Assembly: GCF_006345805.1 (NCBI RefSeq)
Contig: NC_043000.1
Coordinates: forward strand, 124,186,001-124,250,000
Length of the DNA: 64,000 nt
Source: Octopus sinensis
Lineage: Eukaryota
Direction: 5' to 3'
Both the position numbers and the translations under genes were made by a program. The stretch's first letter is position 1; every line of letters starts with the position of its first letter. This document shows, piece by piece, positions 4,350 to 62,766 of this stretch. The notes beneath the pieces were generated by a model. That model was not told the DNA's origin. It made no database searches and saw only the letters and a list, made by a program, of their open reading frames with translations.

Positions 4350-4910
4350 ACTATACTCTTTTACTCTTTTATTTGTTTCAGTCATTTCACCGTGGCCATG
4401 CTGGAGCACCACCTTTAGTTGAGCAAATCGACCCCAGGACTTATTCTTTGTAAGCGTAGTACTTATTCTATCGGTCTCTTTTGCCGAACCGCTAAGTTAC
4501 GGGGACGTAAACACACCAGCATCGGTTGTCAAGCGATGCTGGGGAAACAAACACAGACACACAAACATATACACACATATACATCATCATCGTTTAACGT
4601 CCGTTTTCCTTGCTAGCATGGGTTGAACAGTTTGACCGGGGTCTGGGAAGCCAGGAGGTTGCACCAGGCTCCAGTCTGATCAGGTAGTGTTTCTACAGCT
4701 GGATGCCCTTCCTAATGCCAACCACTCCGTGAGTGTAGTGGGTGCTTTTTATGTGCCACCAGCATACATATATACGGCGGGCTTCTTTCAGTTTCCGTCG
4801 TGTACCAAATCCACTCACAAGGCTTTGGTCAGCCCAAGGCTATAGTAGAAGACACTTGCCCAAGATGCCATGCAGTGGGATTGTACCCAGAACCATGTGG
4901 TTGGTAAGCA
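4350..4910 (-). mobile_element. SINE family B interrupted by an RTE 3'UTR fragment (~4582-4764)
   Basis: B tail arm 4350-4580, (CAT)n-led RTE 3' end inserted in the internal CA/TA tract, B head arm resumes at ~4765. Confidence 0.85.
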
Positions 4911-11339: not shown

Positions 11340-12134
11340 TGTTGACGTCAGTATGCATGGATGTGTAATGTCAGTGTGCACACACGACCGAGTGTAAGCA
11401 TCCTGAGAAAAATGTTGGACATAAGAAGCATCGGATGTGGTGTGCAAGAGAGATGTTTGCACTGGTATGGTCATGTACTATGGATGGATGAGGAGAGATG
11501 TGTGAAGAAGTGCCACTCCCAAACAGTTGAAGGAATCCGGGGTCGAGGTAGACCCAGGAAGACATGGGATGAGGTGGTCAAGCATGACCATCAAACGTTG
11601 GGCCTCACAGAGGTAATGACGAAAGACCGAGATCTCAGGAGATATGCTGTGACTACAAAGACCCAACAAATGAATTGAGTTCATGGCTTGCAGGACGGCC
11701 TGCTGTGCTCACCTTGGATCGTAGGGCGACCTGCTGTGCTTGAGGAGACCTATTGAGTTAAGTTACATCAACATCAAAATAAAAATCAAGTGGAAATTGT
11801 AGTTGTCATACCCATGCCAGTGTCACATAAAAAGCACCATCCGAATGTGGCCGTTGACAGCGTTGCCTTGACTGTCGTCCATACCAGTGGCATGTAAAAA
11901 GCACCAACCGATCATGGCTGCTGCCAGCCTCCTCTGGCCCCTGTGCCAGTGGCACGTAAAAAGCACCCACTATACTCACAGAGTGGTTGGTGTTAGGAAG
12001 GACATCCAGCTGTAGAAACACTGCCAGATCAGACTGGAGCCCGGTGCAGCCTCCTGGCTTCCCAGATCCTGGTCGAACTGTCCAACCCATGCTAGCATGG
12101 AAAACGGACGTTAAACGATGATGATGATGATGAT
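11340..12134 (+). mobile_element. 5'-truncated RTE LINE: ORF2 C-terminus, 3'UTR and (GAT)n tail
   Basis: WMCNVSVHTR...VQERCLHWYGHVLWMDEERCVKK...RGRGRPRKTWDEVV (RTE C-terminal motif), contiguous with a repeat-containing 3'UTR ending GGACGTTAAACGATGATGATG. Confidence 0.9.
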
Positions 12135-12297
12135 TTTTCACAGCATAATTGATAGTACAAAGTTGCATTGTCATGAAATTGCTATTAACTGTTTTGTTAC
12201 CATTTTTCTGTAAAAAATGCACAGCCTTTTCTTAAATTAATTTTGAAAATAATGAAGACTTCAGTTAAATAATTTTGTCATTATTAATCTGGTGTTA

Positions 12298-18577: not shown

Positions 18578-18957
18578 CATCATCATCATCATCATCGTTT
18601 AATGTCCGCTTTCCATGCTAACATGGGTTGGACGATTCAACTGGGGTCTGGCAAGCCCGAAGGCTGCACCAGGCCAGTCAGATCTGGCAGTGTTTCTACA
18701 GCTGGATGCCCTTCCTAACGCCAACCACTCCGAGAGTATAGTGGGTGATTTTATGTGCCACCGACACAGGTGCCAGACGGGGCTGGCAGACGGCCATGCT
18801 CGGATGGTGTTTTTTATGTGCCACCGACACAGGTGCCAGACGAGGCTGGCAGACGGCCACGCTCGGATGGTGTTTTCTTATGTGTCACCGACACAGGTGC
18901 CAGACAAGGCTGGCGAACGGCCACGCTCGGATGGTGTTTGTTACGTGCCCTCAGCAC

Positions 18958-19017
<60 letters not shown>

Positions 19018-19028
19018 GCATATATATA

Positions 19029-19072
<44 letters not shown>

Positions 19073-19111
19073 TATATATGTATATATATATATATGTGTA
19101 TATATATATGT

Positions 19112-19154
<43 letters not shown>

Positions 19155-19372
19155 GTGTGTGTGTGTGTGTCTATGTTTGTCCTCTCAACTTCGCTTGACA
19201 ACCGATGCTGGTGTGTTTGCATCCCTGTAACATAGCAGTTTGGCAAAAGAGACTGATAGAATAAGTACTAGGCTTACAAAGAATAAGTCCTGGGGTCAGT
19301 TTGCTTGACTAAAGGCAGTTCTCCAGCATGGCTGCAATCAAATGACTGAAACAAGTAAAAGAGTAAAAGAGT
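18497..19372 (+). mobile_element. SINE family B with an RTE 3'UTR fragment (~18577-18955) in its internal microsatellite
   Basis: B head-side arm 18497-18575; (CAT)n-led RTE end containing three ~62-bp tandem units; long (TA)n; B tail arm 19170-19372. Confidence 0.88.
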
Positions 19373-26678: not shown

Positions 26679-27554
26679 ATGGATCCATCAAACTTAAGTA
26701 ATTCTGAAATACCAATTTTAATGAAAGGATGCAGAAGCTATGCTGAATTTTTGTGTGGTTATGGTGCTGCCTTTATCAACATTACTGTCACATTTCCCAT
26801 TAACAAGGTGACATTTCGTCAGCAGCTCTATGGTGTAAGTAGTGTGACTGCTTATAAACAAATTTATAATGAAGGTCTACGCCATTTATACCGTGGGCTT
26901 CTGCCCCCTTTGTTACAAAAGTCAACGTCTGTTGCAGCTATGTTTGGAATTTACCAGAATTACAATGAAATACTCTTGAGGAAAACTTATCTGCCAACAG
27001 ATGTCAGGAAAGGCACTGCTGCATTTTTTGCTGGAACTACAGAAGCTATTTTGACACCTTTTGAGCGCATACAGACACTTATGCAAGATCAAACTTACCA
27101 TAAACGTTTTCAGAACACCTTTGAAGCATTTCGAATGACAAGTGCTTACGGACTAAGGGAATACTACCGTGGTTTGACTGCTATTCTTTTGAGAAATGGA
27201 CCGAGCAATGTTTGTTTCTTTTTGGGGCGGGACCATATCAAAGGATATCTTCCAGATGCGGAAAATAAATTACAAATAATTGGGCAAGACTTTATAAGTG
27301 GAGCTTTATTAGGTGCTGTCATTAGTACTGTTTTGTTTCCATTAAATGCTATCAAAACACGCATGCAGTCAGAATTTGGATGTAAATTTATCAGTATTTA
27401 CAATACTTACTGCATACTGCTTGCCGAACGTAATTATTCACGGATTAACTTATTACGAGGAATGCATATCAATTACATAAGATCATTTATGTCATGGGGA
27501 ATTATTAATGCTTCTTATGAATTTTTGTTAACTTACTTGAAACCAAAATCTTGA
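26679..27554 (+). CDS. SLC25A51: Mitochondrial carrier, SLC25A51/SLC25A52 (MCART1) family NAD+ transporter, 291 aa, single coding exon
   Basis: TFPINKVTFRQQLYG, LYRGLLPPLLQK, AGTTEAILTPFERIQTLMQD, EYYRGL..ILLRNG.SN, FPLNAIKTRMQS and HINYIRSFMSWGIINASYEFL align end to end with human SLC25A51, with three PxxxxK/R carrier repeats. Confidence 0.96.
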   Translation: MDPSNLSNSEIPILMKGCRSYAEFLCGYGAAFINITVTFPINKVTFRQQLYGVSSVTAYKQIYNEGLRHLYRGLLPPLLQKSTSVAAMFGIYQNYNEILLRKTYLPTDVRKGTAAFFAGTTEAILTPFERIQTLMQDQTYHKRFQNTFEAFRMTSAYGLREYYRGLTAILLRNGPSNVCFFLGRDHIKGYLPDAENKLQIIGQDFISGALLGAVISTVLFPLNAIKTRMQSEFGCKFISIYNTYCILLAERNYSRINLLRGMHINYIRSFMSWGIINASYEFLLTYLKPKS

Positions 27555-45671: not shown

Positions 45672-46117
45672 TCAATTTGAGCTGATTTGTTGCCAACTGG
45701 GTATATGTTTGTATGTCTTAGGAGGCAGTTCTGGAATAGTATTATCACCGTTAACATTGAAATCATTTGAACTGGTATAGTTCCGCTCGGAATTCCGCTC
45801 TGGAGGGGTGGTGTTGTAGTGGGGGTGGCTGTGTGGCCGAGACAAAGGCATGCTCTGTGCTAGTGTTAATGTCCCATAGCCCACATCCCTGCGAGGTGGA
45901 ACAGGTGGGGGTATGCTATCACGATTGTCCCTGGGAGGTAGAGAAGGTGGTTCAAGGGCCATTGATGAACTTGACTTATTAGGCACATAGTCCAAGATAG
46001 AAGACACAGAGTCTTTGCCTCGCTTTCTTGGAGGCAATGGAGGAGGCAGAATAGGTGGAATAGGTTCTTCTTGAGGAGAGTTCAAAGACATTATATTAAA
46101 AACTGGGTTGAGATTTC
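45672..46117 (-). CDS. SOS: Son of sevenless, last coding exon (Pro-rich tail, stop at 45672-45674)
   Basis: Class II SH3 (Grb2) motifs PPPLPPRKR, PPSLPPRD, PPPVPPRRD and PELPPK; acceptor tttgcag, phase-1 join. Confidence 0.92.
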
Positions 46118-46974: not shown

Positions 46975-47206
46975 CTGAGACAGATAGTGAATTTGCAAAG
47001 CTGTAACTTCCATCTGTAGTTGTAGGGGTGAGTGGAGTGTTTGGTGTTGCTGGGGGAGTATGTTGTATCAATTCAGTGTCTTCTTCATTGACTCGCTGGT
47101 GGCCAAATGGAACAAAATTGAATGTATGACTGCGGGTTGTTGTGTTGTGACGGTTAGACTGCGGTTTGATTCCAGGAGATTTCAAATTAAAATCAGTTTT
47201 TCTTGG
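46975..47206 (-). CDS. SOS: SOS exon (PRKTDFNLKSPGIKP...TPPATPNTPLTP...SVS)
   Basis: LKSPG motif conserved in SOS; acceptor ttaaccag|CCA, donor CAG|GTGTGC phase 1. Confidence 0.85.
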
Positions 47207-48855: not shown

Positions 48856-48972
48856 ATATTTCCGTGGTTGTTTTTCTCCACGAGGCTCCAAATCCAAAGA
48901 CTTGTTATATAAATAGTCATTGAAGTCCTTTTCACTTAGGTCACCAAGTGGATTAAGGTTTACAAAGAACTC
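48856..48972 (-). CDS. SOS: SOS exon (end of Cdc25 domain)
   Basis: [39 protein letters not shown]; AG/GT, phase 0-0. Confidence 0.95.
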
Positions 48973-52130: not shown

Positions 52131-52303
52131 CCTAATTGAAGATTCCACCTTGAAACAATAAGGTTGGTTCTGATACTGCTGAATTTCACCTGTAATTTCT
52201 GCCACTCTTCTCCTTTTACTGAAGTTTATGATACCCTCAGGTCGATTAGGAAGAAAATCAGGATTACCTTCCTCAGTTAATAAAATGTTCGTGAGATACA
52301 TCC
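52131..52303 (-). CDS. SOS: SOS exon (Cdc25 helical hairpin)
   Basis: (G)[17 protein letters not shown]...[33 protein letters not shown]; AG/GT. Confidence 0.97.
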
Positions 52304-52987: not shown

Positions 52988-53105
52988 CAAGGAAAGGGAC
53001 ACATGGCGGATTTATTGATCGCAATTTTTCTATGTATTTTTTGAAGTGGTCAGAATTCAATTCTTTTGCCTCATCAAATGCTCGAATCATTTTACTAGGA
53101 ATTTC
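52988..53105 (-). CDS. SOS: SOS exon (Cdc25)
   Basis: [39 protein letters not shown](G); not in the ORF track; AG/GT phase 0-1. Confidence 0.97.
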
Positions 53106-53523: not shown

Positions 53524-53706
53524 CTCAAAAGTGTGCTCCAACCTGAATACTGGAGCTGAATTGAGAGCACTTACTATTTCTAGTACACCATTAAAATTAT
53601 TCAGGTCTTGAAATACTAACAGGATTTCGATAATGCGAGAAACAACGGCAACTCGCTCTTCAAAATTCTCTGCTTCAATAATACATTTTTCTAACCAGAA
53701 GGTGAA
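53524..53706 (-). CDS. SOS: SOS exon (Cdc25)
   Basis: [61 protein letters not shown]; AG/GT phase 0-0. Confidence 0.97.
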
Positions 53707-55574: not shown

Positions 55575-55730
55575 CATAGTCGAGTGGTGAATCATCTTTA
55601 GTAAGTTTGGTGAAGTTTTGTTTTTATCCTTCTTGATCCATACACTGCCAACCAACTCAGATGGTTGCACTGCTCGGTATAAATCAAATTCTAATAGTGT
55701 TACCTGACGGGCAATTTCTATTGGATGTAA
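55575..55730 (-). CDS. SOS: SOS exon (start of Cdc25)
   Basis: [52 protein letters not shown]; AG/GT phase 0-0. Confidence 0.97.
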
Positions 55731-56472: not shown

Positions 56473-56574
56473 AGTCATGAGATCAAACTCTTCACTTGCA
56501 AATGCCAAATGCCACTCAAAAGGAGGGGGTACAGATTGTAATACTGTTCCTCTCTCAGTACTACTACTCTCAAC
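56473..56574 (-). CDS. SOS: SOS exon (REM-Cdc25 linker)
   Basis: VESSSTERGTVLQSVPPPFEWHLAFASEEFDLMT (PPxxEWH...FDLxT); AG/GT phase 0-0. Confidence 0.93.
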
Positions 56575-57159: not shown

Positions 57160-57316
57160 CTTTCTATAAATTACTTTTGTAATCGACCGAGCCATCTTCC
57201 TCATAGCTTTACCCTGAATCCTATCCAGAAAGCTGAAGAGTTTCTGAAGTAGACTTTTGTCTCTTTCAAAGTCGTAAAAGTGGCGTTCTACCCAATGTCG
57301 TAAAACATTTAAAACT
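57160..57316 (-). CDS. SOS: SOS exon (REM domain)
   Basis: (R)[52 protein letters not shown]; AG/GT phase 2-0. Confidence 0.97.
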
Positions 57317-57859: not shown

Positions 57860-58285
57860 GTCTCATCATCATTATTTACCATCTGCTTTCCCTGCTGGCA
57901 TAGGTTGGATGGTCTGACTCAGAACTGTCAAGCTAGGAGGCTGCACCAGGCTCCAATCTGATCTGGCAAGGTTTCTACAGTTGGATGCCCTTCTTAACAC
58001 TAACCACTCTGAAAGTGTAGTGGGTGTTTTTATGTGCCACCAGCACGGGAGTCAGTCAGGTGGAACTGACATCGGCCACACTCAAATGGTCCTTTTTACG
58101 TGCCAGTCAGGCGGCACTGGTATTGGCCATGCTCAAATGGTGTTTTTTTATATGCCAGTCAGGCAGTACTGGCATCAGTCATGCTCAAATGGTGCATTTT
58201 ACATGTCACTGGCACAGGTGCCAGTCAGGCGGCACTGGCATCGACCACACTTGAATCGTGCTTTTTATATGCCACCAGCATAGGT
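57860..58285 (-). mobile_element. RTE 3'UTR fragment with 4-5 internal tandem units
   Basis: Repeats of GCCAGTCAGGCGGCACTGGCATCGGCCAyrCTCAAATGGT. Confidence 0.85.
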
Positions 58286-58774: not shown

Positions 58775-58903
58775 CGAAACTGCACAGGTTTGATATATTC
58801 TTTTCGAAGACGTTTGAGATCACGTAAAGAAAGGGAGGTGGGGTCACCAGAGGCGGGGTTGTCATCACTTTGTTGTTTCACTTCCGATTCAGGAATATCA
58901 AAT
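58775..58903 (-). CDS. SOS: SOS exon (REM domain)
   Basis: (R)FDIPE...RDLKRLRKEYIKPVQF(R); AG/GT phase 2-2. Confidence 0.96.
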
Positions 58904-60135: not shown

Positions 60136-60348
60136 CGTTCAATTAAAAGATCCAACAGCGTTTGTGGTGTACAGAAGGATCTATAGGTTGTGAGGAATGT
60201 TGGTACAAATTTGGGATCAGCATACATATGGTAGGTGAGTCGTTCAACAAGTTTAAGGAGAGTTCCCCCTTTAATTAATGGACTCTCTCCACTTGCTTCT
60301 TGGTTCTCTTCAAACACAATGTTGTCACTAGAGTCTTCTACAGCAAAC
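60136..60348 (-). CDS. SOS: SOS exon (start of REM)
   Basis: [14 protein letters not shown]...[46 protein letters not shown](R); AG/GT phase 2-2. Confidence 0.97.
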
Positions 60349-62682: not shown

Positions 62683-62766
62683 TTATATATTAATGGTGGG
62701 GGTAACTGCAGTGGATGCTCTTTCTCTTCTTCCTTCAATATATTGTCTAATGTTCGTTCCAACATA
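62683..62766 (-). CDS. SOS: SOS exon (PH-REM helical linker); upstream exons lie outside the window
   Basis: (S)MLERTLDNILKEEEKEHPLQLPPPLIY(K), aligning to human STLERMLD...EEK...LP...YR with the R552 equivalent kept; AG/GT phase 2-2. Confidence 0.93.
   Translation of the reverse strand, partial: YVGTNIRQYIEGRRERASTAVTPTINI

What the first reader, a model, noticed from the sequence alone, without database searches (positions are those of the whole stretch)
57187..57195. SOS allosteric Ras-binding Trp (human W729) is replaced by Met
The exon reads [13 protein letters not shown], where human SOS1 has GKAMKK-WVE-SITK, and Drosophila as I recall keeps W. W729 is central to the REM allosteric site that mediates Ras-GTP positive feedback: W729E blocks it and W729L is a Noonan allele (established). 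TGG-to-ATG needs two changes, the frame is intact and the neighbours also changed (V to A, E to R), so a single read error is unlikely. A-to-I editing could give only Val. R688, R552, H911 and K913 equivalents are retained. This may be a lineage-specific rewiring of Ras feedback (inference).
Basis: partly seen in the sequence, partly recalled or inferred. Interest (0 to 1): 0.7.

Follow-up and report, generated by a model that had tools for sequence, protein, structure and literature searches.

The report
Mollusc-wide Met at SOS allosteric Trp
The octopus SOS gene really does encode methionine where human SOS1 has tryptophan 729, but every mollusc sampled shares this old substitution and the rest of the Ras-binding site is intact, so it looks like a conserved variant of the regulatory site rather than an octopus-specific loss.

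Summary
Minus-strand codon ATG at 57195..57193 encodes Met in an intact exon (57316..57160) and aligns without gaps to human SOS1 W729. The ten REM-Cdc25 exons plus two tail exons translate to residues 574-1275 of the annotated Octopus vulgaris "son of sevenless homolog 1-like" protein, an exact match.

The change is not octopus-specific. All 30 full-length mollusc-clade SOS sequences have Met (20 named cephalopods, gastropods and bivalves, including both Babylonia paralogues, plus 10 unnamed). So does a spliced cephalopod transcript. Brachiopod, priapulid, arthropod, echinoderm, hemichordate, chordate, cnidarian and nematode SOS keep Trp. Position 729 is one of only five mollusc-diagnostic columns in the protein.

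The other residues reported at the allosteric Ras interface are retained (R688, N691, R694, H695, S732, K735, R920, I922, E966, Q973-N976). In the autoinhibited state W729 also packs on DH-domain M269, and molluscs changed that side too (T266Q in 30/30; M269 to V/I/L in 25/30).

I read this as an ancient, conserved remodelling of a site that is still in use, with at most a quantitative effect. Loss of feedback is not shown. Cephalopods add a harsher change, R625P.

The parts
57193..57195 (-). ATG codon for Met756 of octopus SOS, the position of human SOS1 W729
   Evidence: Sequence read and translated. Gap-free alignment to PDB SOS1 chains.
57187..57192 (-). GCT CGG codons for Ala757 and Arg758 (human V730, E731). 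V730A is found in 28/30 molluscs; E731R only in the two cephalopods.
57160..57316 (-). REM-domain exon carrying R688 (last base only), N691, R694, H695, K728, M(729), S732 and K735
   Evidence: Canonical ag/gt splice sites. PF00618 RasGEF_N covers it.
62683..62766 (-). Exon for the PH-REM helical linker, including the R552 equivalent (62756..62754)
60136..60348 (-). REM exon. It carries the cephalopod-specific Pro at the R625 position (CCA, 60203..60201) and Lys at N622.
58775..58903 (-). REM exon with Q683K, L687F and the first two bases of the R688 codon
56473..56574 (-). REM-Cdc25 linker exon with H750R, I752T, T753V and Q755
55575..55730 (-). Cdc25 (RasGEF) exon. W809 and K814 are retained.
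53524..53706 (-). Cdc25 exon
52988..53105 (-). Cdc25 exon with H911, K913, R920, I922, N923 and F929 retained
52131..52303 (-). Cdc25 exon (helical hairpin and the E966-N976 stretch) with all listed allosteric-interface residues retained
48856..48972 (-). Last Cdc25 exon
46975..47206 (-). First exon of the C-terminal tail
   Evidence: The junction is confirmed because the joined translation is an exact substring of P0150.
45672..46117 (-). Terminal coding exon with PxxP motifs (PPPLPPRKR, PPPVPPRR, LPPKTYK) and the stop codon

Best explanation
The window holds the 3' two-thirds of the single annotated Octopus vulgaris SOS gene, on the minus strand. Met at the human W729 position is genuine. 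It most likely arose once on the mollusc stem and has been kept by purifying selection in cephalopods, gastropods and bivalves. By the genetic code, TGG to ATG needs two steps, through TTG (Leu) or AGG (Arg).

In human SOS1 this residue has two roles. It is the hydrophobic centre of the REM face that binds allosteric Ras-GTP, and in the resting enzyme it packs on DH-domain M269, which masks that site. I infer that in molluscs Met still performs both hydrophobic roles. The change would be part of a remodelling of the latch: DH T266Q, M269 to V/I/L and T270A; REM W729M and V730A; plus E755Q.

On this reading the allosteric Ras-GTP site is still used, and the consequence is at most a quantitative shift in feedback affinity or in the autoinhibition threshold. 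Shown here: the sequence, its phylogenetic distribution, and conservation of the remaining interface. Inferred only: that Ras-GTP still binds, and that the DH and REM changes are functionally coupled.
For: Gene identity:
- The 702-aa spliced translation equals residues 574-1275 of P0150, 'son of sevenless homolog 1-like [Octopus vulgaris]'.
- Pfam finds RasGEF_N plus RasGEF in the window's protein, and RhoGEF plus PH upstream in P0150.
- PDB SOS1/SOS2 chains match at E about 1e-199.

Distribution:
- Met in 30/30 mollusc-clade sequences; Trp in 22/23 outgroups in alignment A3, the exception being the nemertean Tubulanus with Gly.
- Trp in 74 of the 75 aligned homologues (arthropod, vertebrate, cnidarian, nematode) that cover the position in A2.
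- An NJ tree recovers a single Met clade, Mollusca.
- Column 729 is one of 5 diagnostic columns in the whole protein.
- Met is invariant while the neighbouring position 731 varies, which argues for constraint on Met itself.

Interface:
- R688, N691, R694, H695, K724, M726, K728, S732, K735, R920, I922, N923, E966, E970, Q973, Y974, Q975 and N976 are retained in molluscs.
- The residue list comes from PMC10765296, PMC11989364 and PMC9023742.

Tolerance of a hydrophobic residue:
- W729L is an activating Noonan allele, whereas the charge-introducing W729E kills binding (PMC3762125; PMC3118925).

Dual role and partner changes:
- M269 (DH) packs on W729 and L687, and T266 faces K728 (PMC3118925).
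- In molluscs position 266 is Q in 30/30, against T/A/V in outgroups. Position 269 is V15/I6/M5/L4, against M in 22/23 outgroups. Position 270 is A in 26/30.

Transcript level:
- A spliced cephalopod mRNA contig has ATG at this codon.
Against: - No binding or activity data exist for any mollusc SOS, and none could be generated here.
- Several conserved 'interface' residues lie at the REM-Cdc25 junction and could be conserved for structural reasons unrelated to Ras binding.
- The interface list comes largely from MD and in-silico papers, not from my own contact analysis of 1NVV.
- The coupling of 269 and 729 is not general. Divergent SOS representatives combine W729 with I/V/A/L269, while Tubulanus (Gly729) and a tardigrade (Ile729) keep M269. 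The mollusc co-occurrence is therefore a single phylogenetic event and not statistical covariation.
- Octopus itself carries further non-conservative changes at reported Ras contacts (R625P, E731R, I752T, T753V), so cephalopods may differ from other molluscs.
- Aculiferan, scaphopod and monoplacophoran molluscs and named annelids were not sampled.
Confidence: 0.6

Rival explanations
1. Molluscan SOS, or at least cephalopod SOS, has lost or strongly weakened Ras-GTP positive feedback. Removing the Trp hot-spot, plus R625P in cephalopods, would abolish productive distal-site binding, so SOS would act as a simple recruited exchange factor.
For: - W729 is the residue whose mutation (to Glu) abolishes allosteric binding.
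- Trp is otherwise almost invariant across Bilateria and Cnidaria.
- Cephalopods additionally changed R625 (R/K in 62 of the 63 non-mollusc sequences that cover it), E731, I752 and T753.
- R625 is reported to pair with Ras D38 (PMC10765296).
- Bandaru et al. 2017 showed that allosteric stimulation of SOS can differ between lineages: choanoflagellate Ras fails to stimulate human SOS (PMC5538825).
Against: - Met is hydrophobic, and the hydrophobic human allele W729L is activating, not disabling.
- At least 18 other interface residues, and Met itself, stay fixed across the sampled molluscs, which is unexpected for an abandoned surface.
- Both Babylonia paralogues keep Met.
Confidence: 0.2
2. The main effect is on autoinhibition rather than on Ras binding. 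The smaller residue at 729, with Q266 and V/I269, gives a DH-REM latch of different strength: a 'Noonan-like' easier release, or a compensated equivalent. This would shift the activation threshold of the pathway across the phylum.
For: - Lepri et al. place W729, K728, I733, M269 and T266 in one Noonan class, predicted to disrupt the DH masking of the distal site.
- Molluscs changed both sides of exactly this contact.
- T266Q is invariant in the 30 molluscs and was not seen in any of the roughly 40 non-mollusc SOS sequences checked at this position.
Against: - No structural model with coordinates was available to test whether Q266 and I269 actually pack on M729.
- Position 269 varies within molluscs (V/I/M/L) and in other phyla with Trp, so the latch may tolerate these residues without any change in strength.
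Confidence: 0.15
3. It is an artefact: a sequencing or assembly error, a pseudogene copy, or a codon that RNA editing corrects.
For: None was found. Octopus is known for extensive A-to-I recoding (general knowledge).
Against: - All 12 exons have canonical splice sites and an open frame identical to the annotated protein.
- The same residue occurs in dozens of independent assemblies and in spliced transcripts.
- A-to-I editing of ATG can only give a Val codon, never Trp (genetic code).
Confidence: 0.01

Closest known systems
Human SOS1/SOS2 REM-Cdc25 unit (PDB 1BKD, 1NVV, 3KSY, 9BVE)
   Same: About 63% identity over 477 aa with almost no gaps (E about 1e-199). Same domain order: histone fold-DH-PH-REM-Cdc25-PxxP tail. 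The catalytic residues and nearly all reported allosteric-interface residues are retained.
   Different: Met for W729, Ala for V730, Lys for Q683 and Phe for L687. In octopus also Pro for R625, Arg for E731, Thr for I752 and Val for T753. On the DH side, Q266, I269 and A270. The C-terminal tail is shorter.
Human SOS1 W729L (Noonan syndrome allele) and the engineered W729E
   Same: The same position is replaced. W729L is also an aliphatic hydrophobic residue, and it is the one-step intermediate (TTG) on a possible path from TGG to ATG.
   Different: W729L is a pathogenic gain-of-function variant on a human background. The mollusc Met is the fixed wild type, accompanied by changes in the DH partner. 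W729E introduces a charge and blocks Ras-GTP binding, so it is not a good proxy for Met.
SOS of other molluscs (Patella, Lottia, Haliotis, Pomacea, Littorina, Babylonia, Physella, Biomphalaria, Elysia, Batillaria, Solemya, Mytilus, Pinctada, Mya, Dreissena, Ruditapes and others)
   Same: All have K-M-A at 728-730, Q266, K683 and Q755.
   Different: They keep R625 (or K) and T753, and have D/E at 731. Most have F at 752 where octopus has T. Octopus and the related transcript P0151 are the most diverged at this interface (16/24 listed positions identical to human, against 20-21/24 for most arthropods and deuterostomes).
Sporadic non-Trp SOS in other lineages (nemertean Tubulanus Gly, tardigrade Paramacrobiotus Ile, nematomorph Gordionus Cys, formicine ants Cys/Leu)
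   Same: They show that position 729 can be replaced in nature.
   Different: These are single species or fast-evolving lineages with many other changes. The mollusc case is the only one seen here in which a whole major clade shares one conserved alternative residue.

Membership tests
SOS (Son of sevenless) Ras guanine-nucleotide exchange factors | REM (RasGEF_N) domain followed by a Cdc25-homology (RasGEF) domain | tested here: met
   PF00618 at 1.6e-31 and PF00617 at 8.8e-54 on the window-encoded 477 aa. PDB SOS1/SOS2 chains match at E about 1e-199.
SOS (Son of sevenless) Ras guanine-nucleotide exchange factors | N-terminal regulatory DH-PH unit (and histone fold) upstream of REM | tested here: met
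   This region lies outside the window. The annotated full-length protein P0150, whose residues 574-1275 equal the window's translation, has PF00621 RhoGEF, PF00169 PH and PF22697 SOS1_NGEF_PH. The histone fold was not scored by Pfam, but it aligns with the other SOS sequences in A3.
SOS (Son of sevenless) Ras guanine-nucleotide exchange factors | C-terminal proline-rich tail with PxxP SH3-binding (Grb2) motifs | tested here: met
   PPPLPPRKR, PPSLPPRD, PPPVPPRR and LPPKTYK are present in the terminal exon 46117..45672. This is motif inspection only.
SOS (Son of sevenless) Ras guanine-nucleotide exchange factors | Catalytic-site residues of the Cdc25 domain (W809, K814, H911, F929, T935, E1002) | tested here: met
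   All are retained in octopus and in at least 27/30 molluscs.
SOS (Son of sevenless) Ras guanine-nucleotide exchange factors | Orthology to animal SOS rather than to RasGRF/RasGRP-type GEFs | tested here: met
   Best hits are all SOS at 55-75% identity. The NJ tree follows animal phylogeny. RasGRF-like representatives are only about 30-35% identical.
SOS enzymes with the canonical allosteric Ras-GTP site (as defined in human SOS1) | Trp at 729, the hydrophobic hot-spot whose W729E mutation abolishes distal Ras-GTP binding | tested here: not met
   The residue is Met (ATG, 57195..57193) in octopus and in 30/30 molluscs.
SOS enzymes with the canonical allosteric Ras-GTP site (as defined in human SOS1) | L687/R688 pair (the L687E/R688A mutant blocks the distal site) | tested here: met
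   R688 is retained. Position 687 is Phe, as in about half of the Trp-bearing invertebrate outgroups.
SOS enzymes with the canonical allosteric Ras-GTP site (as defined in human SOS1) | Remaining polar and hydrophobic contacts reported for the distal site (N691, R694, H695, S732, K735, R920, I922, E966, Q973-N976, R625) | tested here: inconclusive
   All are retained in molluscs in general. In octopus R625 is Pro, and I752 and T753 are changed. The list is taken from MD and in-silico papers.
SOS enzymes with the canonical allosteric Ras-GTP site (as defined in human SOS1) | Ras-GTP binding at the distal site that accelerates exchange (positive feedback) | not testable with these tools
   This needs biochemistry or a complex model. 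The structure tool folds single chains and returns no coordinates.

The most novel reading that the evidence does not exclude
Molluscs as a phylum run the Ras activation switch with a differently tuned SOS. The Trp-to-Met change, together with the DH-side changes, would alter either the strength of Ras-GTP positive feedback or the autoinhibition threshold. Coleoid cephalopods, which add R625P, E731R, I752T and T753V, may have largely given up the distal Ras-GTP site. That would be a natural 'feedback-less' SOS in animals with complex nervous systems.
Probability: 0.2. Interest if true: 0.65.

Novelty: new variant of a known kind. Interest (0 to 1): 0.4.

Why it matters
W729 is the standard handle used to switch off SOS positive feedback in experiments, and it is a Noonan-syndrome position. 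An entire phylum that has kept Met there, with matching changes on the autoinhibitory DH surface, is a ready-made natural experiment. It could show how much of the feedback and autoinhibition depends on that Trp. It also bears on a question raised by Bandaru et al. 2017: whether invertebrate Ras-SOS pairs use the allosteric loop the way vertebrates do.

If Met proves functionally equivalent, the finding is a modest evolutionary footnote. It would still be a useful caution that 'invariant' hot-spot residues can be replaced.

Tried and rejected
1. The first homology search, with the 53-aa exon, returned only unnamed exon-sized ORFs from metagenome assemblies. The look-up of encoding contigs gave ENA analysis accessions without organism names, so taxonomy could not be read that way.

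2. The 477-aa query returned only proteins up to 833 aa and no molluscs. In the first two searches no hit exceeded about 1.75 times the query length. Padding the query with 559 X residues brought in named full-length SOS, including the octopus protein itself.

3. I tested strict covariation of DH M269 with W729 across divergent representatives. It is not general, so I do not claim statistical coupling.

4. I searched the window for an alternative, mutually exclusive exon encoding Trp. None was found.

5. I looked for a Trp-bearing second paralogue in molluscs. None appears among the 120 best hits, and both Babylonia copies have Met. A divergent paralogue below the listing cut-off cannot be excluded.

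6. The literature search found no SOS1 deep mutational scan and no earlier mention of mollusc SOS differences.

7. I did not run structure prediction. The tool folds single chains and returns no coordinates or contacts. At 63% identity to solved structures, a monomer model would add nothing to the question.

They served only as a tblastn probe and a numbering ruler. Positions 688 and 729 of that ruler agree with the PDB alignment.

Full report
**1. What is in the sequence**

On the minus strand, bases 57195..57187 read ATG GCT CGG, i.e. Met-Ala-Arg. They lie in a 157-nt exon, 57316..57160, bounded by tttcag and gtatat. The exon encodes [54 protein letters not shown] search of solved structures aligns these 53 residues without gaps to human SOS1 688-740 (3ksy_A; 1bkd, 1nvu and others; E about 1e-17). 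The Met falls opposite W729, with Ala and Arg opposite V730 and E731.

**2. The gene**

I used a memory-typed human SOS1 only as a tblastn probe and found ten further colinear exons. All have canonical splice sites. The joined translation is 702 aa. It is an exact substring, residues 574-1275, of P0150, 'son of sevenless homolog 1-like [Octopus vulgaris]', 1275 aa. The window is therefore the 3' two-thirds of the octopus SOS gene: PH-REM linker, REM, Cdc25 and the proline-rich tail. The Met is residue 756 of that protein.

- Pfam confirms RasGEF_N plus RasGEF in the window's part, and RhoGEF plus PH upstream in P0150.
- The REM-Cdc25 unit matches SOS1/SOS2 PDB chains at E about 1e-199.
- No second copy of the exon exists in the window.

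**3. Phylogenetic distribution**

The exon-only search found unnamed exon ORFs. Eleven had KAMRKM-ADSI, one had Ile and 17 had Trp. A 477-aa query found 76 homologues, mostly fragments, from arthropods, vertebrates, a hemichordate, a cnidarian and nematodes. Of the 75 that cover the position, 74 have Trp and one ant fragment has Leu.

An X-padded query brought in full-length named proteins. In alignment A3, Met is present in all 30 sequences of the mollusc clade:

- Octopus and a related cephalopod transcript;
- Patella, Lottia, Haliotis, Pomacea, Littorina, two Babylonia paralogues, Physella, Biomphalaria and Elysia;
- Solemya, Potamilus, Mya, Dreissena, Mactra, Ruditapes, Ylistrum, Mytilus and Pinctada;
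- nine unnamed transcripts or contigs.

Batillaria also has Met. Trp is present in Lingula, Priapulus, chelicerates, a myriapod, echinoderms, hemichordates, amphioxus, lamprey and vertebrate SOS1 and SOS2. The nemertean Tubulanus has Gly.

An NJ tree recovers Mollusca as one clade, all with Met, next to Lingula, Tubulanus and an unnamed Trp-bearing sequence. The simplest reading is one substitution on the mollusc stem, or at least before the last common ancestor of cephalopods, gastropods and bivalves.

Among the roughly 1250 well-occupied columns of the full-length alignment, only five separate molluscs from everything else under my criteria: positions 80, 299, 401, 729 and 755. A census of 50%-identity representatives shows that more divergent SOS-like proteins sometimes carry F, Y, I, L or C at this position. 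The named ones are a tardigrade (Ile), a nematomorph (Cys) and an ant SOS-like protein (Cys). Trp is therefore not absolutely invariant. Molluscs are still the only large clade seen with a fixed alternative residue.

**4. Not an error, and present in mRNA**

L003 is a 4252-nt Logan contig from run ERR12374249. It has one uninterrupted 3744-nt ORF encoding a full-length SOS, so it is a spliced transcript. It groups with Octopus, is 83% identical overall, and reads AAG ATG GCT CGT at this site. Several other mollusc hits are likewise 4-6 kb contigs carrying proteins of 1200 aa or more.

**5. What the residue does in the known enzyme**

This section rests on the literature.

- Ras-GTP bound at the distal site between REM and Cdc25 stimulates exchange about 75-fold.
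- W729E abolishes that binding.
- W729L is a Noonan allele with increased Ras-GTP and ERK output (PMC3762125; PMC4722452).
- Lepri et al. (PMC3118925) show that in autoinhibited SOS1 the DH domain masks this same surface. M269 packs hydrophobically on W729 and L687, and T266 faces K728. T266K, M269R/T, K728I, W729L and I733F form one class of activating alleles.

Position 729 therefore has two jobs: contacting Ras-GTP and docking the autoinhibitory DH domain.

**6. The rest of the site in molluscs**

I took the SOS1 residues that three papers place at the allosteric Ras interface and tabulated them.

- Retained in essentially all molluscs: R688, N691, R694, H695, K724, M726, K728, S732, K735, R920, I922, N923, E966, E970, Q973, Y974, Q975 and N976.
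- Mollusc-wide changes: W729M, V730A (28/30) and E755Q. I752F occurs in most molluscs. Q683K is shared with Lingula and Tubulanus. L687F is shared with many Trp-bearing invertebrates.
- Met is invariant, while the neighbouring position 731 varies among molluscs.

An abandoned surface would be expected to drift, and this one has not. There is a caveat: some of these residues sit at the REM-Cdc25 junction and may be conserved for structural reasons.

**7. The DH partner**

These residues are encoded upstream of the window and are read from P0150 and its relatives.

| Position | Outgroups | Molluscs |
|---|---|---|
| 266 | T12 / A10 / V1 | Q in 30/30 |
| 269 | M in 22/23 | V15 / I6 / M5 / L4 (octopus Ile) |
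| 270 | mostly T | A in 26/30 |

Both sides of the documented latch differ in molluscs. This is one phylogenetic event, not replicated covariation. In divergent representatives W729 coexists with I/V/A/L269, while Tubulanus and the tardigrade keep M269 with Gly or Ile at 729. I treat the coupling as a plausible inference, not a result.

**8. Cephalopod extras**

Octopus and the related transcript share further changes at listed interface positions: R625P (CCA, 60203..60201), H699R, E731R, I752T and T753V. R625 is Arg or Lys in 62 of the 63 non-mollusc sequences of alignment A2 that cover it. It is Arg or Lys in every non-cephalopod sequence in A3, and it is reported to pair with Ras D38. It is the main reason I keep a meaningful probability on weakened feedback in cephalopods specifically.

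**9. Interpretation**

The best-supported reading has three parts.

- (a) Shown: this is a real, ancient, selectively maintained mollusc-wide substitution in an otherwise ordinary SOS orthologue.
- (b) Inferred: the distal site is still in use. A flexible hydrophobic Met replaces Trp in both of its contacts, together with adjusted DH residues.
- (c) Inferred: any functional effect is quantitative.

The path TGG to ATG needs two steps. One route passes through TTG (Leu), the same substitution as the activating human allele. That suggests the intermediate need not have been a loss of function.

The rivals are loss of feedback (about 0.2, higher for cephalopods than for other molluscs), a change mainly in autoinhibition strength (about 0.15), and artefact (about 0.01).

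**10. Novelty and score**

The gene is annotated and unremarkable. Within the searchable library I found no mention of the phylum-wide Met or of the DH-side changes. It is a new natural variant of a well-known regulatory site, of moderate interest. It would matter more if biochemistry showed altered feedback. Bandaru et al. 2017 had already raised the possibility that allosteric SOS regulation differs outside vertebrates.

Noticed in passing
window 60201..60203 (-), 57187..57189 (-), 56542..56547 (-), 57283..57285 (-): There are cephalopod-only changes at residues reported in the allosteric Ras interface: R625P, E731R, I752T/T753V and H699R. Octopus shares them with the related cephalopod transcript L003/P0151. 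R625 is R/K in 62 of the 63 non-mollusc sequences that cover it, and in every non-cephalopod sequence of alignment A3.
   Followed up: partly
P0150 and relatives, human numbering 266, 269, 270 (DH domain; encoded upstream of the window): The DH residues that dock on K728/W729 in autoinhibited SOS1 differ in molluscs: T266Q in 30/30, M269 to V/I/L in 25/30, and T270A in 26/30. The link between 269 and 729 does not hold in other lineages.
   Followed up: partly
P0150 and relatives, human numbering 80, 299, 401 (outside the window): Three other columns are mollusc-diagnostic: H80D (histone fold), A299V (DH), and G/S401W, an invariant new Trp at the end of the DH domain. Their structural position relative to the REM surface was not examined.
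   Followed up: no
alignments A2, A3 and the representatives: Position 729 is also non-Trp in a nemertean (Tubulanus, Gly), a tardigrade (Paramacrobiotus, Ile), a nematomorph (Gordionus, Cys) and formicine ant SOS-like proteins (Anoplolepis Cys, Camponotus fragment Leu).
   Followed up: partly
L001:10001-10261 (ENA ERZ26859072 contig): A divergent SOS copy, closest to caenogastropod SOS (about 64-66% identity), has Asn at 728 and Ile (ATT) at 729. Ile is one step from the mollusc Met.
   Followed up: partly
window 26679..27554 (+): An intronless 291-aa ORF encodes a mitochondrial carrier family protein (Pfam Mito_carr, 6e-35, three repeats). It lies downstream of the SOS gene on the opposite strand.
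   Followed up: partly
window 11806-12222 (-), 18615-19235 (+), about 4705-4812 (+), about 57942-58013 (+): A dispersed repeat family gives similar ORF fragments ('[23 protein letters not shown]...'). One copy lies in the SOS intron just upstream of the exon of interest. Microsatellite-like tracts (ORFs reading IYIYIY) lie near 19.0 kb and 41.9 kb.
   Followed up: no
tool behaviour: In the first two homologous-protein searches no hit exceeded about 1.75 times the query length (92 aa for 53; 833 aa for 477). Padding a partial protein with X residues recovered the named full-length orthologues.
   Followed up: yes
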